A stretch of 63,040 nt of DNA, counting the filler, from Octopus bimaculoides (Eukaryota): NCBI RefSeq assembly GCF_001194135.2. It is 5 parts of 4 records of this genome, joined end to end, with 100 filler letters (N's around TTAATTAATTAA, not from the genome) between each part and the next. Parts side by side here need not be neighbours in the genome. Positions count along the whole stretch, not along the records: positions 1 to 16,974 come from NC_068981.1; 4 more parts are not named here. The stretch is one strand, 5' to 3'. Shown piece after piece: positions 1,429 through 16,974 of the stretch; within the stretch, counting starts at the first letter, position 1; each line of letters opens with the position of its first letter. Below the pieces are notes generated by a model, which saw only the letters and a list, made by a program, of their open reading frames with translations, ran no database searches and was not told the origin of the DNA. The translations under genes and the position numbers were made by a program.

Positions 1429-2130
1429 NNNNNNNNNNNNNNNNNNNNNNNNNNNNNNNNNNNNNNNNNNNNNNNNNNNNNNNNNNNNNNNNNNNNNNNN
1501 NNNNNNNNNNNNNNNNNNNNNNNNNNNNNNNNNNNNNNNNNNNNNNNNNNNNNNNNNNNNNNNNNNNNNNNNNNNNNNNNNNNNNNNNNNNNNNNNNNNN
1601 NNNNNNNNNNNNNNNNNNNNNNNNNNNNNNNNNNNNNNNNNNNNNNNNNNNNNNNNNNNNNNNNNNNNNNNNNNNNNNNNNNNNNNNNNNNNNNNNNNNN
1701 NNNNNNNNNNNNNNNNNNNNNNNNNNNNNNNNNNNNNNNNNNNNNNNNNNNNNNNNNNNNNNNNNNNNNNNNNNNNNNNNNNNNNNNNNNNNNNNNNNNN
1801 NNNNNNNNNNNNNNNNNNNNNNNNNNNNNNNNNNNNNNNNNNNNNNNNNNNNNNNNNNNNNNNNNNNNNNNNNNNNNNNNNNNNNNNNNNNNNNNNNNNN
1901 NNNNNNNNNNNNNNNNNNNNNNNNNNNNNNNNNNNNNNNNNNNNNNNNNNNNNNNNNNNNNNNNNNNNNNNNNNNNNNNNNNNNNNNNNNNNNNNNNNNN
2001 NNNNNNNNNNNNNNNNNNNNNNNNNNNNNNNNNNNNNNNNNNNNNNNNNNNNNNNNNNNNNNNNNNNNNNNNNNNNNNNNNNNNNNNNNNNNNNNNNNNN
2101 NNNNNNNNNNNNNNNNNNNNNNNNNNNNNN

Positions 2131-6910: not shown

Positions 6911-7010
6911 AGAATCCTAAAAACTGCCTTATTAGGTTAAGATAAATACACTACTTAACTGTTATAATTGTTAACTACAATATTTAGTATATTTCAATAT
7001 ATTTATTGAT

Positions 7011-7217
7011 CGAGCAGTCGGAATCATTGGGATGCCGAACAAAATGCATAGCGGCATTTCGTCCGTCATTACAATCTGAGTTCAAATACCACCGAGGTCG
7101 ACTTTGCCTTTCATCCTTTCGAGGGCGATAAATTAAGTACCAGTTACATACTGGGGTCGACCTAATCGACTGCCCCCCCCACCCAAATTTTGGGCCTTGT
7201 GCCTAGAGTAGAAAAGA
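7011..7217 (+). mobile_element. SINE family B copy
   Basis: Same core as 4933-5155, with a GCCTAGAGTAGAAAAGAA tail. Confidence 0.9.
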
Positions 7218-7230
7218 ATATATTTGTTGA

Positions 7231-7440
7231 TCGGGCAGGCAGAATCGTTGGAACGCCGGGCAAAATGCTTAGCGGCATTTCATCCGTCACTACATTCTGA
7301 GTTCAAATTCCGCCGGGGTCGACTTTACCTTTCATCCTTTCGGAGTCGATTAAACAAGTACTAGTTGAGTACTTTGATCACTGTAATCGACTTACCCCTT
7401 TCCCGAAGTTGCAGGCCTTGTGCCAAAATTTGAAACCAAC
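7231..7440 (+). mobile_element. SINE family B copy, tandem with the previous one
   Basis: Same core, with a GTGCCAAAATTTGAAACC tail. Confidence 0.9.
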
Positions 7441-9384: not shown

Positions 9385-10018
9385 NNNNNNNNNNNNNNNN
9401 NNNNNNNNNNNNNNNNNNNNNNNNNNNNNNNNNNNNNNNNNNNNNNNNNNNNNNNNNNNNNNNNNNNNNNNNNNNNNNNNNNNNNNNNNNNNNNNNNNNN
9501 NNNNNNNNNNNNNNNNNNNNNNNNNNNNNNNNNNNNNNNNNNNNNNNNNNNNNNNNNNNNNNNNNNNNNNNNNNNNNNNNNNNNNNNNNNNNNNNNNNNN
9601 NNNNNNNNNNNNNNNNNNNNNNNNNNNNNNNNNNNNNNNNNNNNNNNNNNNNNNNNNNNNNNNNNNNNNNNNNNNNNNNNNNNNNNNNNNNNNNNNNNNN
9701 NNNNNNNNNNNNNNNNNNNNNNNNNNNNNNNNNNNNNNNNNNNNNNNNNNNNNNNNNNNNNNNNNNNNNNNNNNNNNNNNNNNNNNNNNNNNNNNNNNNN
9801 NNNNNNNNNNNNNNNNNNNNNNNNNNNNNNNNNNNNNNNNNNNNNNNNNNNNNNNNNNNNNNNNNNNNNNNNNNNNNNNNNNNNNNNNNNNNNNNNNNNN
9901 NNNNNNNNNNNNNNNNNNNNNNNNNNNNNNNNNNNNNNNNNNNNNNNNNNNNNNNNNNNNNNNNNNNNNNNNNNNNNNNNNNNNNNNNNNNNNNNNNNNN
10001 NNNNNNNNNNNNNNNNNN

Positions 10019-10051
<33 letters not shown>

Positions 10052-10062
10052 ATGGCCTAGAG

Positions 10063-11019
10063 CATGGGTCACCAAACTGCGGGCCGGATCCGGCCCGCGA
10101 CGTCAATTTGTCTGGCCCACCGTTGTATGCTGAAAAAAAAAAGGAACATGCTTTTATACCGTTTCTTACACTTCTTAGATTACACATGTTGTATGTATAC
10201 TGAGTCAGTCACGTGACGTGCTATGTATTTCACGTGCCATAATAATTACTGCAGTACATCACGTGTGCCTCGGGCTAGTCAGTTATTAGTGATTACAATT
10301 AAAACGAGAATATCTGACGCCGAGGCCTAAGACTGCTTTTGTTTTTTCTTCACCCATCGTTATGGCTACTAAGAAGAGAAAGGTCGATGATGAATGTCGC
10401 ATTTTCAATAAAGAATGGGGAGGAAAGTACTTCTTTGGAGAAACGACCAGAAAGCTAGTTGCCTGATATGTAACGACAGTGTTGCTGTTATGAAAGAGTA
10501 CAATATTCGTTGTCATTACAGAGCAAAACATCTCTCAACACATTCTAAGTATTCTAGAAATTTGAATCTATGAAATTTGAATCGAGAAATTTGAATCTAT
10601 GAAACGTAGTTTGGAATTTCAAAGGAGTTTATTTATGAAAAGGTTTATTGAAAATGAATCTATCACTCGTGTAAGTTACAAAATAGTGAATAAGTTGGCA
10701 GAGCGAGGAAAACTATTTACCGACGGGAACTTAATAAAAGATTGCATGATGGAAGCAGCAAACGACTTGTGTCCTGAAAAAGCTAACATGTTTGGCTGTA
10801 TCAGCCTTTCAGCAAGTTCAGTTGTGCGGAGAATAGAAGAACGTGGAGAGAATATACAGTTACAGATACATGAGAAAGCTAAGACATTTTTGTGGTATTC
10901 TTTTGCAATGGATGAGTCTACTGATCTCACTAGTACGTCACAAATTCTTGTGTTCATTCGTGGTGTTAATTGCAACTTTGAGATTATAGAAGAAATGTCA
11001 TCCGTTTGCAGTATACATG
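10063..11019 (+). mobile_element. hAT (Charlie/SPIN, GTF2IRD2-like) DNA transposon 5' part with frameshifted transposase
   Basis: Left TIR CATGGGTCACCAAAC follows GCCTAGAG (Charlie-type NTCTAGAN-like target), then the subterminal palindrome GCGGGCCGGATCCGGCCCGC. ATG at 10362 reads MATKKRKVDDECRIFNKEW; a shifted frame gives CLICNDSVAVMKEYNIRCHY..KH (BED finger). ORF 10599 has GKLFTDGNLIKDCM, ISLSASSVVRRIEE and YSFAMDESTD...QILVFIRGV (first catalytic Asp). Confidence 0.92.
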
Positions 11020-11062
11020 TGGTTGGGAAGCAAACTTCTTACCACACAGCCACTCCAGCGTC
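11016..11062 (-). mobile_element. SINE family A 5' head, truncated
   Basis: Reverse complement CGCTGGAGTGGCTGTGTGGTAAGAAGTTTGCTTCCCAACCACATG. Confidence 0.8.
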
Positions 11063-11596
11063 TTTCATTCTCTTACCTGTTTCAGCCGTTTGACTGCGGC
11101 CGTGTTGGAACACCACTTTTAGTCGAGCTGATCGACCCCAGGACTTATTCTTTGTAAGTCTAGTACTTATTCTCTCGGTGTCTTTTGCCGAACCGCTAGG
11201 TTACGGGGACGTAAACACACCTGCATCGCTTGTCAAGCGATGTTGGCGGGACAAACAGATAGACAGACAGACACACACGCACACATACATACACACACAC
11301 ATAGTGTAAAAGATCGTGGGTAAGGCCAAAACACGCACATCGGCAACATTCGTCAATTTCTTGAAAATGGGGTCATAACGCCGAAATATTGAATACAGGG
11401 TAAGTCTGCATTAATTCACATATCTGTTTTCTTGTGATTTACCTTGCATTTACTTCGCATTGTTTTGGCCTTACCCACGATCTTTTATACAATATATTCT
11501 ACACAATGCTTTAGAGTACTTATTCCATTATATNNNNNNNNNNNNNNNNNNNNNNNNNNNNNNNNNNNNNNNNNNNNNNNNNNNNNNNNNNNNNNN

Positions 11597-14901: not shown

Positions 14902-15219
14902 TCCTAAACGTTATGCTGTCAATCAGCCGGTCTTTTCAAAAGTATCGTTTCTTTAGCCATTGTAAATAATGATAGAATATAATTCATAAATGCATTGAAA
15001 AAAATGTGTAAATAACATTTGAGTTCGTTTTTAGTTTAGGAGGAAGACGATAGCCGTGTGGAAGTTGGAAACGGTTGTGTTCTGAGAATTCTTTATGAAT
15101 ATTATCGAAATGGAAGCAAAAGCCTAAAGATAAAGAGAAAAAATAAAGGCAGGCTAGTTACAGACGACCGACACAACCATAGGCATCAACATCGTTTCCC
15201 GCCACCATTACCGCCGCCG

Positions 15220-15966
15220 CCGCCACCACCACTATCATCACCACGTCCACTACCTAATGAGCTGCAACCAACACCGCCGCAGCCATTGGCACAGCAATGT
15301 CCGCTTCGGCAACTCCACCACCACCACCACCACCACCACCACCACCACTACTACCACACCGCTACTACCACAGCCACCGCCAACTGTGTCGCTGCCCGCC
15401 AGCAAAACCACAACAGCCGCCATCATCAACGCCACCACCAAATCAAGTCACCCCACCATCATCATATCCACCATCAACACCATCGCCAGTTTCCCTCACT
15501 AGTACCACCACCACCAACAACAACAACACCAGCAGTCATACTGAAATGACTTTCTTTTAGTGTTGATTATGACGTCTCTCTCTCGCTCTCTTTTTCTCTC
15601 GGCCTCTGTCTGTCTATCTCTCCTTCTCACTGTCTGTCTGTCTGTCTCTGTCTTTCTTCCTCCGCCCCTCCGTTCCTCCCTCCCTTTCTCTCTCTCTCTC
15701 TGTTGCTCTCTTTCTCAATCTCTCTCTATTGCTCTCTCTCTCTCTCTCTCTGTTGCTCTCTTTCTCTCTCTCTGTTGCTCTCTTTCTCTCTCTCTGTTGC
15801 TCTCTGTCTCGCTGTTGCTGTCTGTCTGTCACACTCTCTCTTTCTCTCTATCTCTTTGTCTCTCTCTCTTTCTCTCTATCTCTTTGTCTCTCTCTCTCCC
15901 CTCTCTCTCTCTCTCTTTCTCTCTGTCTGTGTCTGTCTCTATTTGTCTGACTGTCTGTCTGCCTCC

Positions 15967-16012
<46 letters not shown>

Positions 16013-16028
16013 GTATCTCTCTCTCTCT

Positions 16029-16084
<56 letters not shown>
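15220..16084. repeat. (CCA/CAA)n low-complexity tract followed by a long (CT)n tract
   Basis: Direct reading. It explains the poly-P/H/T and SLSL ORFs. Confidence 0.9.
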
Positions 16085-16088
<4 letters not shown>

Positions 16089-16215
16089 TGCTCGCTTCTT
16101 ACGGGTTGCATTGTCTTAATTTCCCCAAGGACGCTGTGTCTAAATATATAATGATTCAGGTCATTTTTAGCTTTAGAATTATCTTTAATTTCATTAGCGT
16201 TAGTCTCCAAGAAAA

Positions 16216-16220
<5 letters not shown>

Positions 16221-16277
<57 letters not shown>
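16221..16277. repeat. (TAC)n microsatellite
   Basis: Direct reading. Confidence 0.95.
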
Positions 16278-16279
<2 letters not shown>

Positions 16280-16706
16280 AAATTTTCATTTAATACTTAA
16301 AATTTTGAGCTGTTCCCATAAAAAGAGTTCGTCTCTATCCAAACAAACACACACATACATACATATACACACAAACACATAAACAGGTACACACATGTAA
16401 ACACACACAAACACACACACACACACACGTACACGCCTCCGCACTTTTTACTCACACGCCAATATACTCTTTCGCACTCATGGACCCCTCTTTCCAGCAC
16501 ACCGGCGTATCTATTCATAGAATGAAATTACTAATGGATATATATATATGTGAATGTGAGTGTGTGAGAGTATGTGCTTGTGTATTTCCCTCTATCTGTG
16601 TGTGTGCGTGCATGTATGTATACATGCATGCATATGTATATATATATATATATATATTTATGAATTTATATATATATATAAGTCAGCAGCGCCGCCTGGC
16701 TAAGGC

Positions 16707-16767
16707 TTGGCTACTCTGCATTGACAAGGGGCAACACCCTGAAACTAGTCTAGTCTGCAGATGCCAA
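16707..16767 (+). ncRNA. type I hammerhead ribozyme, extended stem I, U3-A8 core variant
   Basis: TTGGC-TAC-TCTGCA | TTGACAA | GGGG-CAACA-CCCT | GAAA | CTA-GTC-TAG | TC^ | TGCAGA-T-GCCAA. Helix I inner 6 bp (16715-20/16756-61) and outer 5 bp (16707-11/16763-67), helix II 4 bp, helix III ACTA/TAGT. Predicted GUC cleavage after C16755. Confidence 0.8.
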
Positions 16768-16852
16768 ACCAGCAGGGGGACACTGCTGACCTCCCCTGTT
16801 CGAAGGTTATAAAGGACACAGGTTTCGTGTGTCACATAGCTAGCTAGAGGCG

Positions 16853-16907
16853 ATGGCTTCTTGGAGCTAATTCACGGCAGCTTTCGTCCTAATTTTGGGA
16901 CTGCCAT
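16853..16907 (-). ncRNA. partial (core-deleted) hammerhead on the opposite strand
   Basis: Reverse complement ATGGC-A-GTCC-CAAAATTA-GGAC-GAAA-GCTG-CCGTGAAT-TAGC-TC^-CAAGAA-GCCAT. Helix II, GAAA, helix III and a CUC site are intact; CUGANG and the inner helix I 5' strand are absent. Confidence 0.5.
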
Positions 16908-16974
16908 GTTGGCTTGGCGATAACTATTAATTTCCAGTACCGCTGCCGTAGTCTCCTTTAGAGAGACTTAGAAA

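What the first reader, a model, noticed from the sequence alone, without database searches (positions are those of the whole stretch)
16707..16767. Intact-looking full-length type I hammerhead ribozyme with a rare U3-A8 covariant core
Sequence: every element is in register. Inner helix I TCTGCA/TGCAGA, a TAC/T internal loop, outer helix TTGGC/GCCAA, core TTGACAA, helix II GGGG/CCCT with loop CAACA, GAAA, helix III ACTA/TAGT and a GUC site (cut after 16755). Knowledge: C3-G8 is a Watson-Crick tertiary pair in the active fold, and the compensatory U3-A8 pair is tolerated, so both departures from CUGANGA are mutually compensating rather than decay. The UAC bulge and C-A-rich loop II mirror the loop-bulge contact of the Schistosoma Sm-alpha ribozyme (loop CAAAUA, from memory). 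G10.1-U11.1 is a wobble. Inference: probably active, and missed by strict CUGANGA pattern scans.
Basis: partly seen in the sequence, partly recalled or inferred. Interest (0 to 1): 0.9.

Follow-up and report, generated by a model that had tools for sequence, protein, structure and literature searches.

The report
Octopus retroelement hammerhead ribozyme, variant core
This is a real hammerhead self-cleaving RNA motif of the ordinary animal type, sitting at the edge of a probable retroelement in an octopus-like genome; its unusual core pair is already documented elsewhere, and whether this copy still cuts is untested.

Summary
Window 16704-16770 (+) has every element of a canonical metazoan type I hammerhead ribozyme (HHR) in register, with cleavage predicted after C16755. 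It is not chance. A relaxed descriptor hits the piece once, and 920 Mb of random sequence gave no match with all helices. A covariance model built only from the Schistosoma-derived N79 ribozyme and the Rfam HH9 consensus ranks it first in the window (20.2 bits, E about 4e-4). That is level with a perfect-core natural HHR from a lake metagenome (21.2 bits), which has the same helix II and loop 2 (GGGG-CAACA-CCCC). Rfam misses the candidate, but it also scores that perfect HHR far below threshold.

The U3-A8 pair is a published natural covariation (Perreault 2011; Cervera & de la Peña 2014), and Rfam hammerheads are already reported in a cephalopod genome. This is therefore a new member of a known kind.

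"Probably active" is unproven. U11.1 lies at a former CpG and is predicted to let helix II slip. Helix III carries a 5-nt tandem duplication. The hairpin is strongly CpG-depleted. No second copy could be retrieved, so covariation within the family is untested.

The parts
16632..16680 (.). (TA)n microsatellite directly abutting the 5' edge of the structured element. It is a possible insertion target.
   Evidence: TRF row. EN+ Penelope-like elements show insertion bias for microsatellites, including (TA)n (PMC8557442). Support is weak because the window is full of microsatellites.
16682..16703 (+). 5' arm of the distal, imperfect extension of stem I. It pairs with 16771-16790.
   Evidence: MFE and centroid of 16679-16800, z = -3.1. 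GTCAGCAG 16682-16689 is the exact reverse complement of CTGCTGAC 16783-16790.
16704..16711 (+). Closing (outer) stem I, 5' strand GG-C-TTGGC. It pairs with 16763-16770, with one C-A mismatch at 16706/16768.
   Evidence: pair probabilities 0.89-1.0.
16712..16714 (+). Loop 1, 5' side UAC, opposite the single U at 16762. It is the presumed partner of loop 2 in the tertiary contact.
   Evidence: Same UAC/U as in the N79/Sm1 Schistosoma ribozyme and in the metagenome HHR L012. The contact itself is inferred.
16715..16720 (+). Helix I, 5' strand UCUGCA (positions 2.6-2.1).
   Evidence: Six Watson-Crick pairs with 16756-16761.
16721..16727 (+). Core box U3 U4 G5 A6 C7 A8 A9, with U3-A8 in place of C3-G8.
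   Evidence: The covariation is documented.
16728..16740 (+). Helix II GGGG/CCCU with loop 2 CAACA. The 10.1-11.1 pair is a G-U wobble.
   Evidence: L012 has GGGG-CAACA-CCCC. Predicted register slip.
16741..16743 (+). Core G12 A13 A14.
16744..16754 (+). Helix III ACUA / loop GUC / UAGU (A15.1-U16.1 closing). It contains the tandem duplication CTAGT 16745-16749 and 16750-16754. With one copy it would read A-CUAG-U, the canonical 1-bp stem with a palindromic tetraloop.
   Evidence: Canonical helix III is described in PMC4209133. The hairpin alone is not stable, while the self-duplex of the segment is -12.3 kcal/mol. The duplication is an inference from the sequence.
16755..16756 (+). Predicted scissile bond: C17 (16755) | U1.1 (16756).
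   Evidence: Position follows from the register of all three helices. Cleavage itself is not shown.
16756..16761 (+). Helix I, 3' strand UGCAGA (positions 1.1-1.6).
16762..16770 (+). Loop 1 3' side (U16762) and closing stem I 3' strand GCCAA-A-CC.
16771..16790 (+). 3' arm of the distal extension of stem I.
16791..16974 (+). Rest of the GC-richer, highly structured element. It is cut off by the end of the piece.
   Evidence: 16681-16974 has GC 0.51 against 0.37 for the piece. Fold z = -3.6. No second copy in the piece.

Best explanation
Window 16682-16790 (+) is a genuine copy of a retroelement-borne, canonical metazoan type I hammerhead ribozyme in an octopod-like genome. Shown: the sequence has all three helices, the loop 1/loop 2 pair and every core position needed for catalysis, in register. 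Inferred mechanism: in a + strand transcript the long stem I forms, and loop 1 (UAC/U) docks on loop 2 (CAACA). U3 pairs with A8, so the residue-8 2'-OH and G12 are placed for acid-base catalysis. The chain is then cut between C16755 and U16756, giving a 2',3'-cyclic phosphate and a 5'-OH. In the parent element (a non-LTR retrozyme or a Penelope-like element repeat) this would trim multimeric transcripts to unit length for circularisation and reverse transcription. I take U3-A8 to be a compensated, lineage-level core variant. I take U11.1 (a CpG transition) and the CTAGT duplication in helix III to be later changes of this copy or its subfamily. I therefore expect at most weak self-cleavage from this single copy, better at raised Mg2+ or when two copies pair through helix III, rather than a fast ribozyme.
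For: Register and uniqueness. Chance excluded: (0 of 920 Mb with all helices). Of 144 loci from two collections that match an 18-base HHR pattern, only one (L012) has complete helices. Independent covariance model from N79 plus the HH9 consensus: 20.2 bits, E about 4e-4, top hit in the window, equal to the perfect-core natural HHR L012 at 21.2 bits. Same architecture as the Schistosoma ribozyme and as described for canonical metazoan HHRs: helix I 6 bp, helix II 4 bp, short palindromic helix III. L012 shares TAC, GGGG-CAACA-CCC and GAAAC. Across the window, L012 and L095, 95% of cells pair and 8 of 14 pairs change on both sides. U3-A8 is natural and active in vitro, and the residue-8 2'-OH is the key catalytic group (abstract). 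A natural family with a non-Watson-Crick base of helix II still cleaves, better as a dimer. Retroelement context: the element abuts (TA)n, has GC 0.51 against 0.37 for the piece and folds with z = -3.6. Host: the hAT ORF is 80% identical to Octopus proteins and the window shares repeats with Octopus loci. For weak activity: helix II slips in 83% of the ensemble, the HHR fold is -18.6 against an MFE of -22.0 kcal/mol, and helix III is unstable alone.
Against: No other copy of the element was found, so neither family-level conservation of U3-A8 nor covariation within the family is shown. No Rfam hammerhead model matches even at E<=10. No tandem partner, reverse transcriptase or endonuclease ORF is visible; the piece ends 219 nt after the cut site. 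GC of 0.51 is above the <45% described for metazoan retrozymes. The strong CpG depletion is equally what a dead, decaying copy would show. Nearest-neighbour folding ignores tertiary contacts, so the predicted slip may overstate the damage.
Confidence: 0.6

Rival explanations
1. One reading: an intact, efficiently self-cleaving monomeric ribozyme. The 4-bp helix III created by the duplication removes the need for a dimer, and the G-U at 10.1-11.1 is harmless.
For: All catalytic positions are present. U3-A8 is active in vitro. Lengthening helix III rescued cleavage of single minimal motifs. Loop 1 and loop 2 are identical to those of a perfect-core natural HHR. All helices are intact.
Against: Predicted helix II slip and competing G5A6C7/G16.2U16.1C17 pairing. 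G10.1-C11.1 is described as highly conserved. The triloop hairpin of helix III has no predicted stability. There is no comparative or experimental support.
Confidence: 0.22
2. A dead relic: a once canonical CUGACGA...C11.1 hammerhead that has decayed neutrally. U3, A8 and U11.1 would be three independent hits, and the apparent compensation a coincidence.
For: G8->A (C7pG8) and C11.1->U (C11.1pG12) are both CpG transitions. The hairpin has 2 CpG against 9.1 expected (P = 4e-4) with a TpG+CpA excess. There is a C-A mismatch in the outer stem and only a single copy in view.
Against: C3->U is not at a CpG. It must hit one specific base while about 10 other invariant core positions and 20 of 21 helix pairs stay intact; my rough estimate puts this several-fold below the lineage-variant reading (inference). 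U3-A8 families with about 1,300 members exist in another lophotrochozoan.
Confidence: 0.15
3. Chance: an ordinary long inverted repeat whose tip happens to resemble a hammerhead core.
For: 16682-16790 is a long hairpin on both strands, so helix I comes for free. Rfam finds nothing.
Against: Even with helix I granted, the loop must supply about 9 fixed bases, a 3-8 pair, two hairpins in register and the UAC/U and CAACA loops. There were 0 full matches in 920 Mb, and the independent model gives E about 4e-4. Rfam also fails on a perfect-core HHR.
Confidence: 0.03

Closest known systems
Canonical metazoan type I hammerhead ribozymes (Schistosoma Sm-alpha/Sm1 and its N79 derivative; amniote HH9)
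   Same: Stem I open. UAC/U (or UUAC/UAC) internal loop 1, 6-bp helix I, 4-bp helix II, CAA-rich loop 2, GAAA, short helix III with a palindromic centre, and a UC cleavage site.
   Different: U3-A8 instead of C3-G8. G-U instead of G-C at 10.1-11.1. Loop 2 is 5 nt (CAACA) rather than 6. Helix III is 4 bp with a triloop through a CTAGT duplication. Stem I extends to about 25 pairs.
Metagenome tandem-repeat hammerhead L012 (Trout Bog Lake contig, 626-nt period)
   Same: TAC loop 1, GGGG-CAACA-CCC helix II and loop 2, GAAAC, single U on the 3' side of loop 1, and a nearly equal score to the independent model.
   Different: L012 has the consensus core CUGAUGA, C11.1, a 1-2 bp helix III with palindromic CCGG, A17, and two visible tandem copies. 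There is no sequence similarity outside the ribozyme. TAC, the core, CAACA and GAAA were fixed by my search pattern, so only helix II and the overall register are independent agreement.
U3-A8 covariant hammerheads (Perreault et al. 2011; Cercyon Penelope-like elements of Schistosoma, Cervera & de la Peña 2014)
   Same: The same compensated core pair, and a retroelement context in a lophotrochozoan.
   Different: The Cercyon motifs are minimal HHRs: helix II 7-8 bp, helix I 4-5 bp, no helix III and a poorly defined loop 1. This one has the canonical, tertiary-contact architecture.
Non-LTR retrozymes / Penelope-like element terminal repeats
   Same: Type I HHR inside a compact, highly structured non-coding element next to a microsatellite.
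   Different: No tandem copy and no RT/GIY-YIG ORF are visible before the piece ends. GC is 0.51 rather than <45%.

Membership tests
Hammerhead ribozyme, type I | Invariant core bases U4 G5 A6 A9 G12 A13 A14 | tested here: met
   16722-16724, 16727 and 16741-16743 read directly.
Hammerhead ribozyme, type I | Watson-Crick pair between positions 3 and 8 (normally C-G) | tested here: met
   U16721 and A16726 can pair. U3-A8 is a documented natural and active covariation. This is not the consensus identity.
Hammerhead ribozyme, type I | A15.1-U16.1 pair and H (not G) at position 17 | tested here: met
   A16744, U16754 and C16755.
Hammerhead ribozyme, type I | Three helices in register around the core, with stem I open | tested here: met
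   Descriptor hit with helix I 6 bp, II 4 bp, III 4 bp. All 14 model pairs form in the covariance-model alignment.
Hammerhead ribozyme, type I | G10.1-C11.1 pair (highly conserved, not absolute) | tested here: not met
   G16728-U16740 is a wobble, with a predicted register slip. Natural exceptions exist: U-U in axolotl HHR_Amex2 and compensatory changes in crickets.
Hammerhead ribozyme, type I | Score at or above the Rfam gathering threshold (Hammerhead_1, HH9, HH10) | tested here: not met
   No hit at gathering or at E<=10. Control: a perfect-core natural HHR reaches only 19.2 bits against a gathering score of 52, so this test is insensitive here.
Hammerhead ribozyme, type I | Site-specific self-cleavage | not testable with these tools
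   Needs in vitro transcription or RNA end mapping.
Canonical metazoan type I HHR | Helix I 6 bp and helix II 4 bp, with loop 1 and loop 2 nucleotides for the tertiary contact | tested here: met
   6 bp and 4 bp. UAC/U as in N79/Sm1. CAACA as in L012. The contact itself is inferred.
Canonical metazoan type I HHR | Short helix III (1-2 bp) capped by a small palindromic loop | tested here: inconclusive
   As found it is 4 bp plus a triloop. Read with one CTAGT copy it would be A-CUAG-U.
Canonical metazoan type I HHR | Many related genomic copies with compensatory helix changes | tested here: inconclusive
   No copy in the piece, in 41 kb of Octopus DNA, or through the protein and pattern searches. 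The source genome itself could not be searched.
Non-LTR retrozyme | Short tandem repeats (about 170-400 bp), each with an HHR | tested here: inconclusive
   Only one HHR, and the piece ends 219 nt after the cut site.
Non-LTR retrozyme | Low GC (<45%) | tested here: not met
   GC is 0.507 for 16681-16974, against the description.
Penelope-like element terminal repeat HHR | Adjacent RT / GIY-YIG ORF | not testable with these tools
   Upstream is only low-complexity sequence. Downstream is cut off.
Penelope-like element terminal repeat HHR | Minimal HHR layout (long helix II, short helix I, no helix III) | tested here: not met
   The candidate is canonical, and no minimal HHR is present in the piece.

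The most novel reading that the evidence does not exclude
Octopods carry an undescribed, still active retrozyme-like lineage. Its hammerhead would combine the tertiary-stabilised canonical architecture with a U3-A8 core, a G-U at 10.1-11.1 and a duplicated, monomer-competent helix III. That would make this a functional core variant that profile and pattern scans systematically miss, possibly expressed as circular RNA.
Probability: 0.12. Interest if true: 0.45.

Novelty: new member of a known kind. Interest (0 to 1): 0.3.

Why it matters
If it is active, it adds a natural example of three simultaneous departures from the hammerhead consensus in the tertiary-stabilised context: U3-A8, G-U at 10.1-11.1 and an extended helix III. 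That would be useful for understanding core tolerance. It would also point to a cephalopod ribozyme-bearing retroelement family that Rfam-based annotation undercounts. The practical lesson holds either way. Rfam's hammerhead models and Infernal's default filters miss both this variant and a perfect-core short-helix-III hammerhead. Counts such as '235 hammerheads' in cephalopod genomes are therefore probably lower bounds. Otherwise it is an ordinary retroelement remnant.

Tried and rejected
- **Rfam.** Three scans gave no hammerhead hit. The mir-297, mir-3149 and similar hits at 16601-16694 are artefacts of the TA/TG microsatellite.
- **Self-comparison of 16681-16974 against the piece.** No second copy. 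The repeated 8-mer GGCTTGGC (16704 and 16911) is at chance level and does not mark a 207-bp tandem.
- **Exact look-up of two window ORFs.** Neither is on record, so the locus could not be extended past 16974.
- **Spurious-ORF trick.** I searched the 43-aa translation across the ribozyme to catch other copies. There were no word-sharing candidates, and the exhaustive HMMER search gave only two weak multi-stretch hits that I did not inspect and take for chance matches.
- **Family-specific 29-base pattern.** 0 hits in the metagenome and viral collections.
- **Looser 18-base pattern.**
  - After filtering for helices only L012 is a real HHR.
- **41 kb of Octopus sinensis and O. vulgaris DNA.** No HHR and no element copy.
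- **tRNA scan for a SINE-like origin.** Nothing found. The A/B-box resemblances I saw by eye are weak and I dropped them.
- **Minimal-HHR scan of the piece.** Nothing found.
- **L095 as a route to a Penelope reverse transcriptase query.** It has no RT ORF.
- **Papers not held.** Martick & Scott 2006 and Przybilski & Hammann 2007, and the supplements of two papers.
- **MAFFT alignment of three HHRs (A1).** It misaligned the 3' strand and I discarded it.
- **Minus-strand partial hit at 16864-16902.** I considered it as a second, inverted HHR and did not accept it, because no CUGANGA box or helix I can be found.

Full report
**What is in the sequence**

The + strand at 16704-16770 reads GG-C-TTGGC | TAC | TCTGCA | TTGACAA | GGGG-CAACA-CCCT | GAA | ACTA-GTC-TAGT | C | TGCAGA | T | GCCAA-A-CC. 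All 21 proposed pairs are standard pairs, one of them G-U, and there is an additional C-A mismatch at 16706/16768.

The paired region is longer than reported. 16682-16790 folds as one imperfect hairpin of about 25 stem-I pairs with the ribozyme at the tip (z = -3.1). The whole 16681-16974 stretch is unusually structured (z = -3.6).

**Is it more than chance?**

- A type I descriptor that allows C3-G8 or U3-A8 and G-U pairs hits the piece exactly once, on either strand.
- In 920 Mb of Markov-1 random sequence with the piece's dinucleotide make-up, the loosest form of the descriptor gave 23 hits.
  - Four had helix I >=6 bp and helix II >=4 bp.
  - None also had helix III >=4 bp.
  - This means about 1e-4 or fewer expected in this window.
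  - These were the Schistosoma-derived N79 ribozyme (text of PMC12550524) and the Rfam HH9 consensus line.
  - With filters off, the candidate is the best hit in the window: 16709-16766, 20.2 bits, E about 4e-4, all helices in register. E-values from this short calibration are rough.
- A pattern fixing 18 hammerhead bases returned 120 metagenome loci (capped) and 24 viral loci. Only one of these has complete helices. Complete helices are therefore not a by-product of the core boxes.

**Why Rfam is silent, and what that is worth**

No hammerhead model matches at gathering, or at E<=10 on 301 or 86 bases.

The one real hammerhead fished from the metagenome scan, L012, has a perfect CUGAUGA...GAAA core and sits in two tandem copies 626 nt apart. 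It reaches only 19.2 bits against HH9 (gathering score 52) and does not match Hammerhead_1 at all at E<=1. My own model scores L012 at 21.2 bits, about the same as the candidate. With Infernal's default filters the candidate is lost altogether.

The Rfam result is therefore weak evidence against the candidate.

**Comparison with known hammerheads**

- Cervera & de la Peña describe canonical metazoan type I HHRs as follows: helix I 6 bp, helix II 4 bp, interacting loop nucleotides, and a helix III of 1-2 bp capped by a small palindromic loop. These often work as dimers.
- N79/Sm1 reads GG-TAC-ATCCAG-CTGATGA-GTCC-CAAATA-GGAC-GAAA...TC-CTGGAT-T-CC. It has the same UAC/U loop 1 and the same helix lengths as the candidate.
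- L012 reads TAC-GCCTAA-CTGATGA-GGGG-CAACA-CCCC-GAAA-CCGG-T-A-TTAGGT-T. Its helix II and loop 2 are identical to the candidate's except for C at 11.1.
- On the model-fitted alignment of the window, L012 and a third metagenome HHR (L095), 95% of cells pair and 8 of 14 pairs change on both sides. No shuffle or slid control comes close. This rests on only three distinct sequences and an alignment fitted to the structure.

**The three departures from consensus**

- **U3-A8.**
  - This pair is not new. Perreault et al. found C3/G8 covarying to U3/A8 in several natural hammerheads and note that such ribozymes were already shown to be active.
  - Cervera & de la Peña found about 1,300 U3-A8 motifs in Schistosoma Penelope-like elements.
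  - The catalytically important group of residue 8 is its 2'-OH (abstract), so an A that still pairs with position 3 is mechanistically plausible.
- **U11.1.**
  - This gives a G-U where a G-C is described as highly conserved.
  - It lies at a former CpG (C11.1pG12). G8->A likewise lies at C7pG8.
  - The hairpin 16682-16792 has 2 CpG against 9.1 expected (P = 4e-4) and an excess of TpG+CpA (P = 0.02). Both changes therefore fit deamination decay.
  - In the nearest-neighbour ensemble, U11.1 lets helix II slip to A9-U11.1/G10.1-C11.2... in about 83% of structures, against 2% when C is placed at 11.1 in silico.
  - Natural families with a non-Watson-Crick base of helix II do exist and cleave weakly as monomers and better as dimers (axolotl HHR_Amex2).
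- **Helix III.**
  - It contains a tandem duplication, CTAGT at 16745-16749 and 16750-16754. With one copy it would be A-CUAG-U, exactly the canonical 1-bp stem with a palindromic tetraloop (inference).
  - As found, it gives 4 bp plus a triloop with no predicted stability of its own. Two copies could pair through this segment at -12.3 kcal/mol.
  - The hammerhead fold costs 3.4 kcal/mol over the MFE, which pairs G5A6C7 with G16.2U16.1C17.

**Decay or selected variant?**

The C3->U change is not at a CpG. Under pure decay it must hit that one base while about ten other invariant core positions and 20 of 21 helix pairs remain intact.

A rough likelihood comparison (my inference, not a tool result) favours a lineage that already carried U3-A8 by several-fold. 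U11.1 and the duplication are left undecided. This cannot be settled without other copies.

**Context**

- The window is an octopod-like genome assembly.
  - It has N gaps and dense microsatellites.
  - It holds a hAT/FAM200-ZBED5-like ORF 80% identical to Octopus sinensis, O. bimaculoides and O. vulgaris proteins.
  - Many of its repeats are shared at 73-88% identity with two Octopus loci.
- The structured, GC-richer element (GC 0.51 against 0.37 for the piece) begins directly after a (TA)n array. Endonuclease-bearing Penelope-like elements show a microsatellite insertion bias including (TA)n. A 2026 preprint argues that animal retrozymes are non-autonomous partners of such elements.
- No tandem copy, RT ORF or minimal HHR is visible. 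The piece ends 219 nt after the cut site, so retrozyme, Penelope repeat and solo copy cannot be told apart.
- Hammerheads have already been annotated in a cephalopod: 235 Rfam Hammerhead_1 hits in the giant squid.

**Attempts to find relatives**

All of these failed:
- exact ORF look-ups;
- the translated-ORF trick;
- family-specific patterns;
- 41 kb of Octopus DNA.

**Verdict**

This is a real, architecturally complete type I hammerhead of the canonical animal kind, most likely a retroelement copy. Its U3-A8 core is a known compensated variant. Its catalytic state is uncertain, and I expect it to be weak because of U11.1.

It is a new member of a known kind. Interest is modest at 0.3, mainly as a natural multi-variant core and as a demonstration that standard scans undercount such motifs.

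Noticed in passing
window 16864-16902, minus strand: Partial hammerhead-like match about 100 nt downstream and on the opposite strand: A-GUCC-CAAAAUUA-GGAC-GAAA-GCUGC... (10.9 bits, E 0.2, model positions 19-53). The helix II and loop are close to the Schistosoma GUCC-CAAAUA-GGAC. No CUGANGA box or helix I could be found upstream, so it is either a relic of an inverted copy or chance.
   Followed up: partly
L012 1-1157 (metagenome contig TBL_comb48_EPIDRAFT_1067204); HHRs at 427-477 and 1053-1103: Two near-identical 626-nt tandem units, each with a perfect-core canonical type I hammerhead (a retrozyme-like arrangement) from a freshwater lake metagenome. Rfam scores it only 19.2 bits against a gathering score of 52.
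   Followed up: partly
L095 4119-4174 (+): Another type I hammerhead-like motif (29.2 bits with my model) in an unrelated metagenome contig, with A and C at positions 10.1 and 11.1. It was found by accident, away from the pattern match that fetched the locus.
   Followed up: no
window 6996-7424: 1.9 copies of a 221-bp unit. The same repeat family occurs several times in the Octopus sinensis and O. vulgaris loci (73-87% identity). It looks like the abundant tRNA-derived SINE of octopus genomes (from memory), although ARAGORN finds no tRNA.
   Followed up: partly
window 10057-11019 (ORF 10599-11093): Fragment of a hAT-type, FAM200/ZBED5/GTF2IRD2-like transposase-derived gene. It is 88% nucleotide identical to a locus on an Octopus sinensis chromosome and 85% to O. 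vulgaris.
   Followed up: partly
window 16601-16694: Sub-threshold Rfam 'microRNA' matches (mir-297 at 46 bits against a gathering score of 90, mir-3149, mir-466 and others) on both strands of the TG/TA microsatellite. These are low-complexity artefacts, not miRNA genes.
   Followed up: yes
window 15058-16300: Long ORFs (163, 246, 138 and 124 aa) made of His/Pro/Thr or Leu/Ser runs over (CCA)n, (TCTC)n and (ACT)n arrays. They are reading-frame artefacts of microsatellites.
   Followed up: no
window 1429-2130, 9385-10018, 11534-11596: Runs of N (assembly gaps), each flanked by TA/TG microsatellites. The assembly breaks at simple repeats.
   Followed up: no
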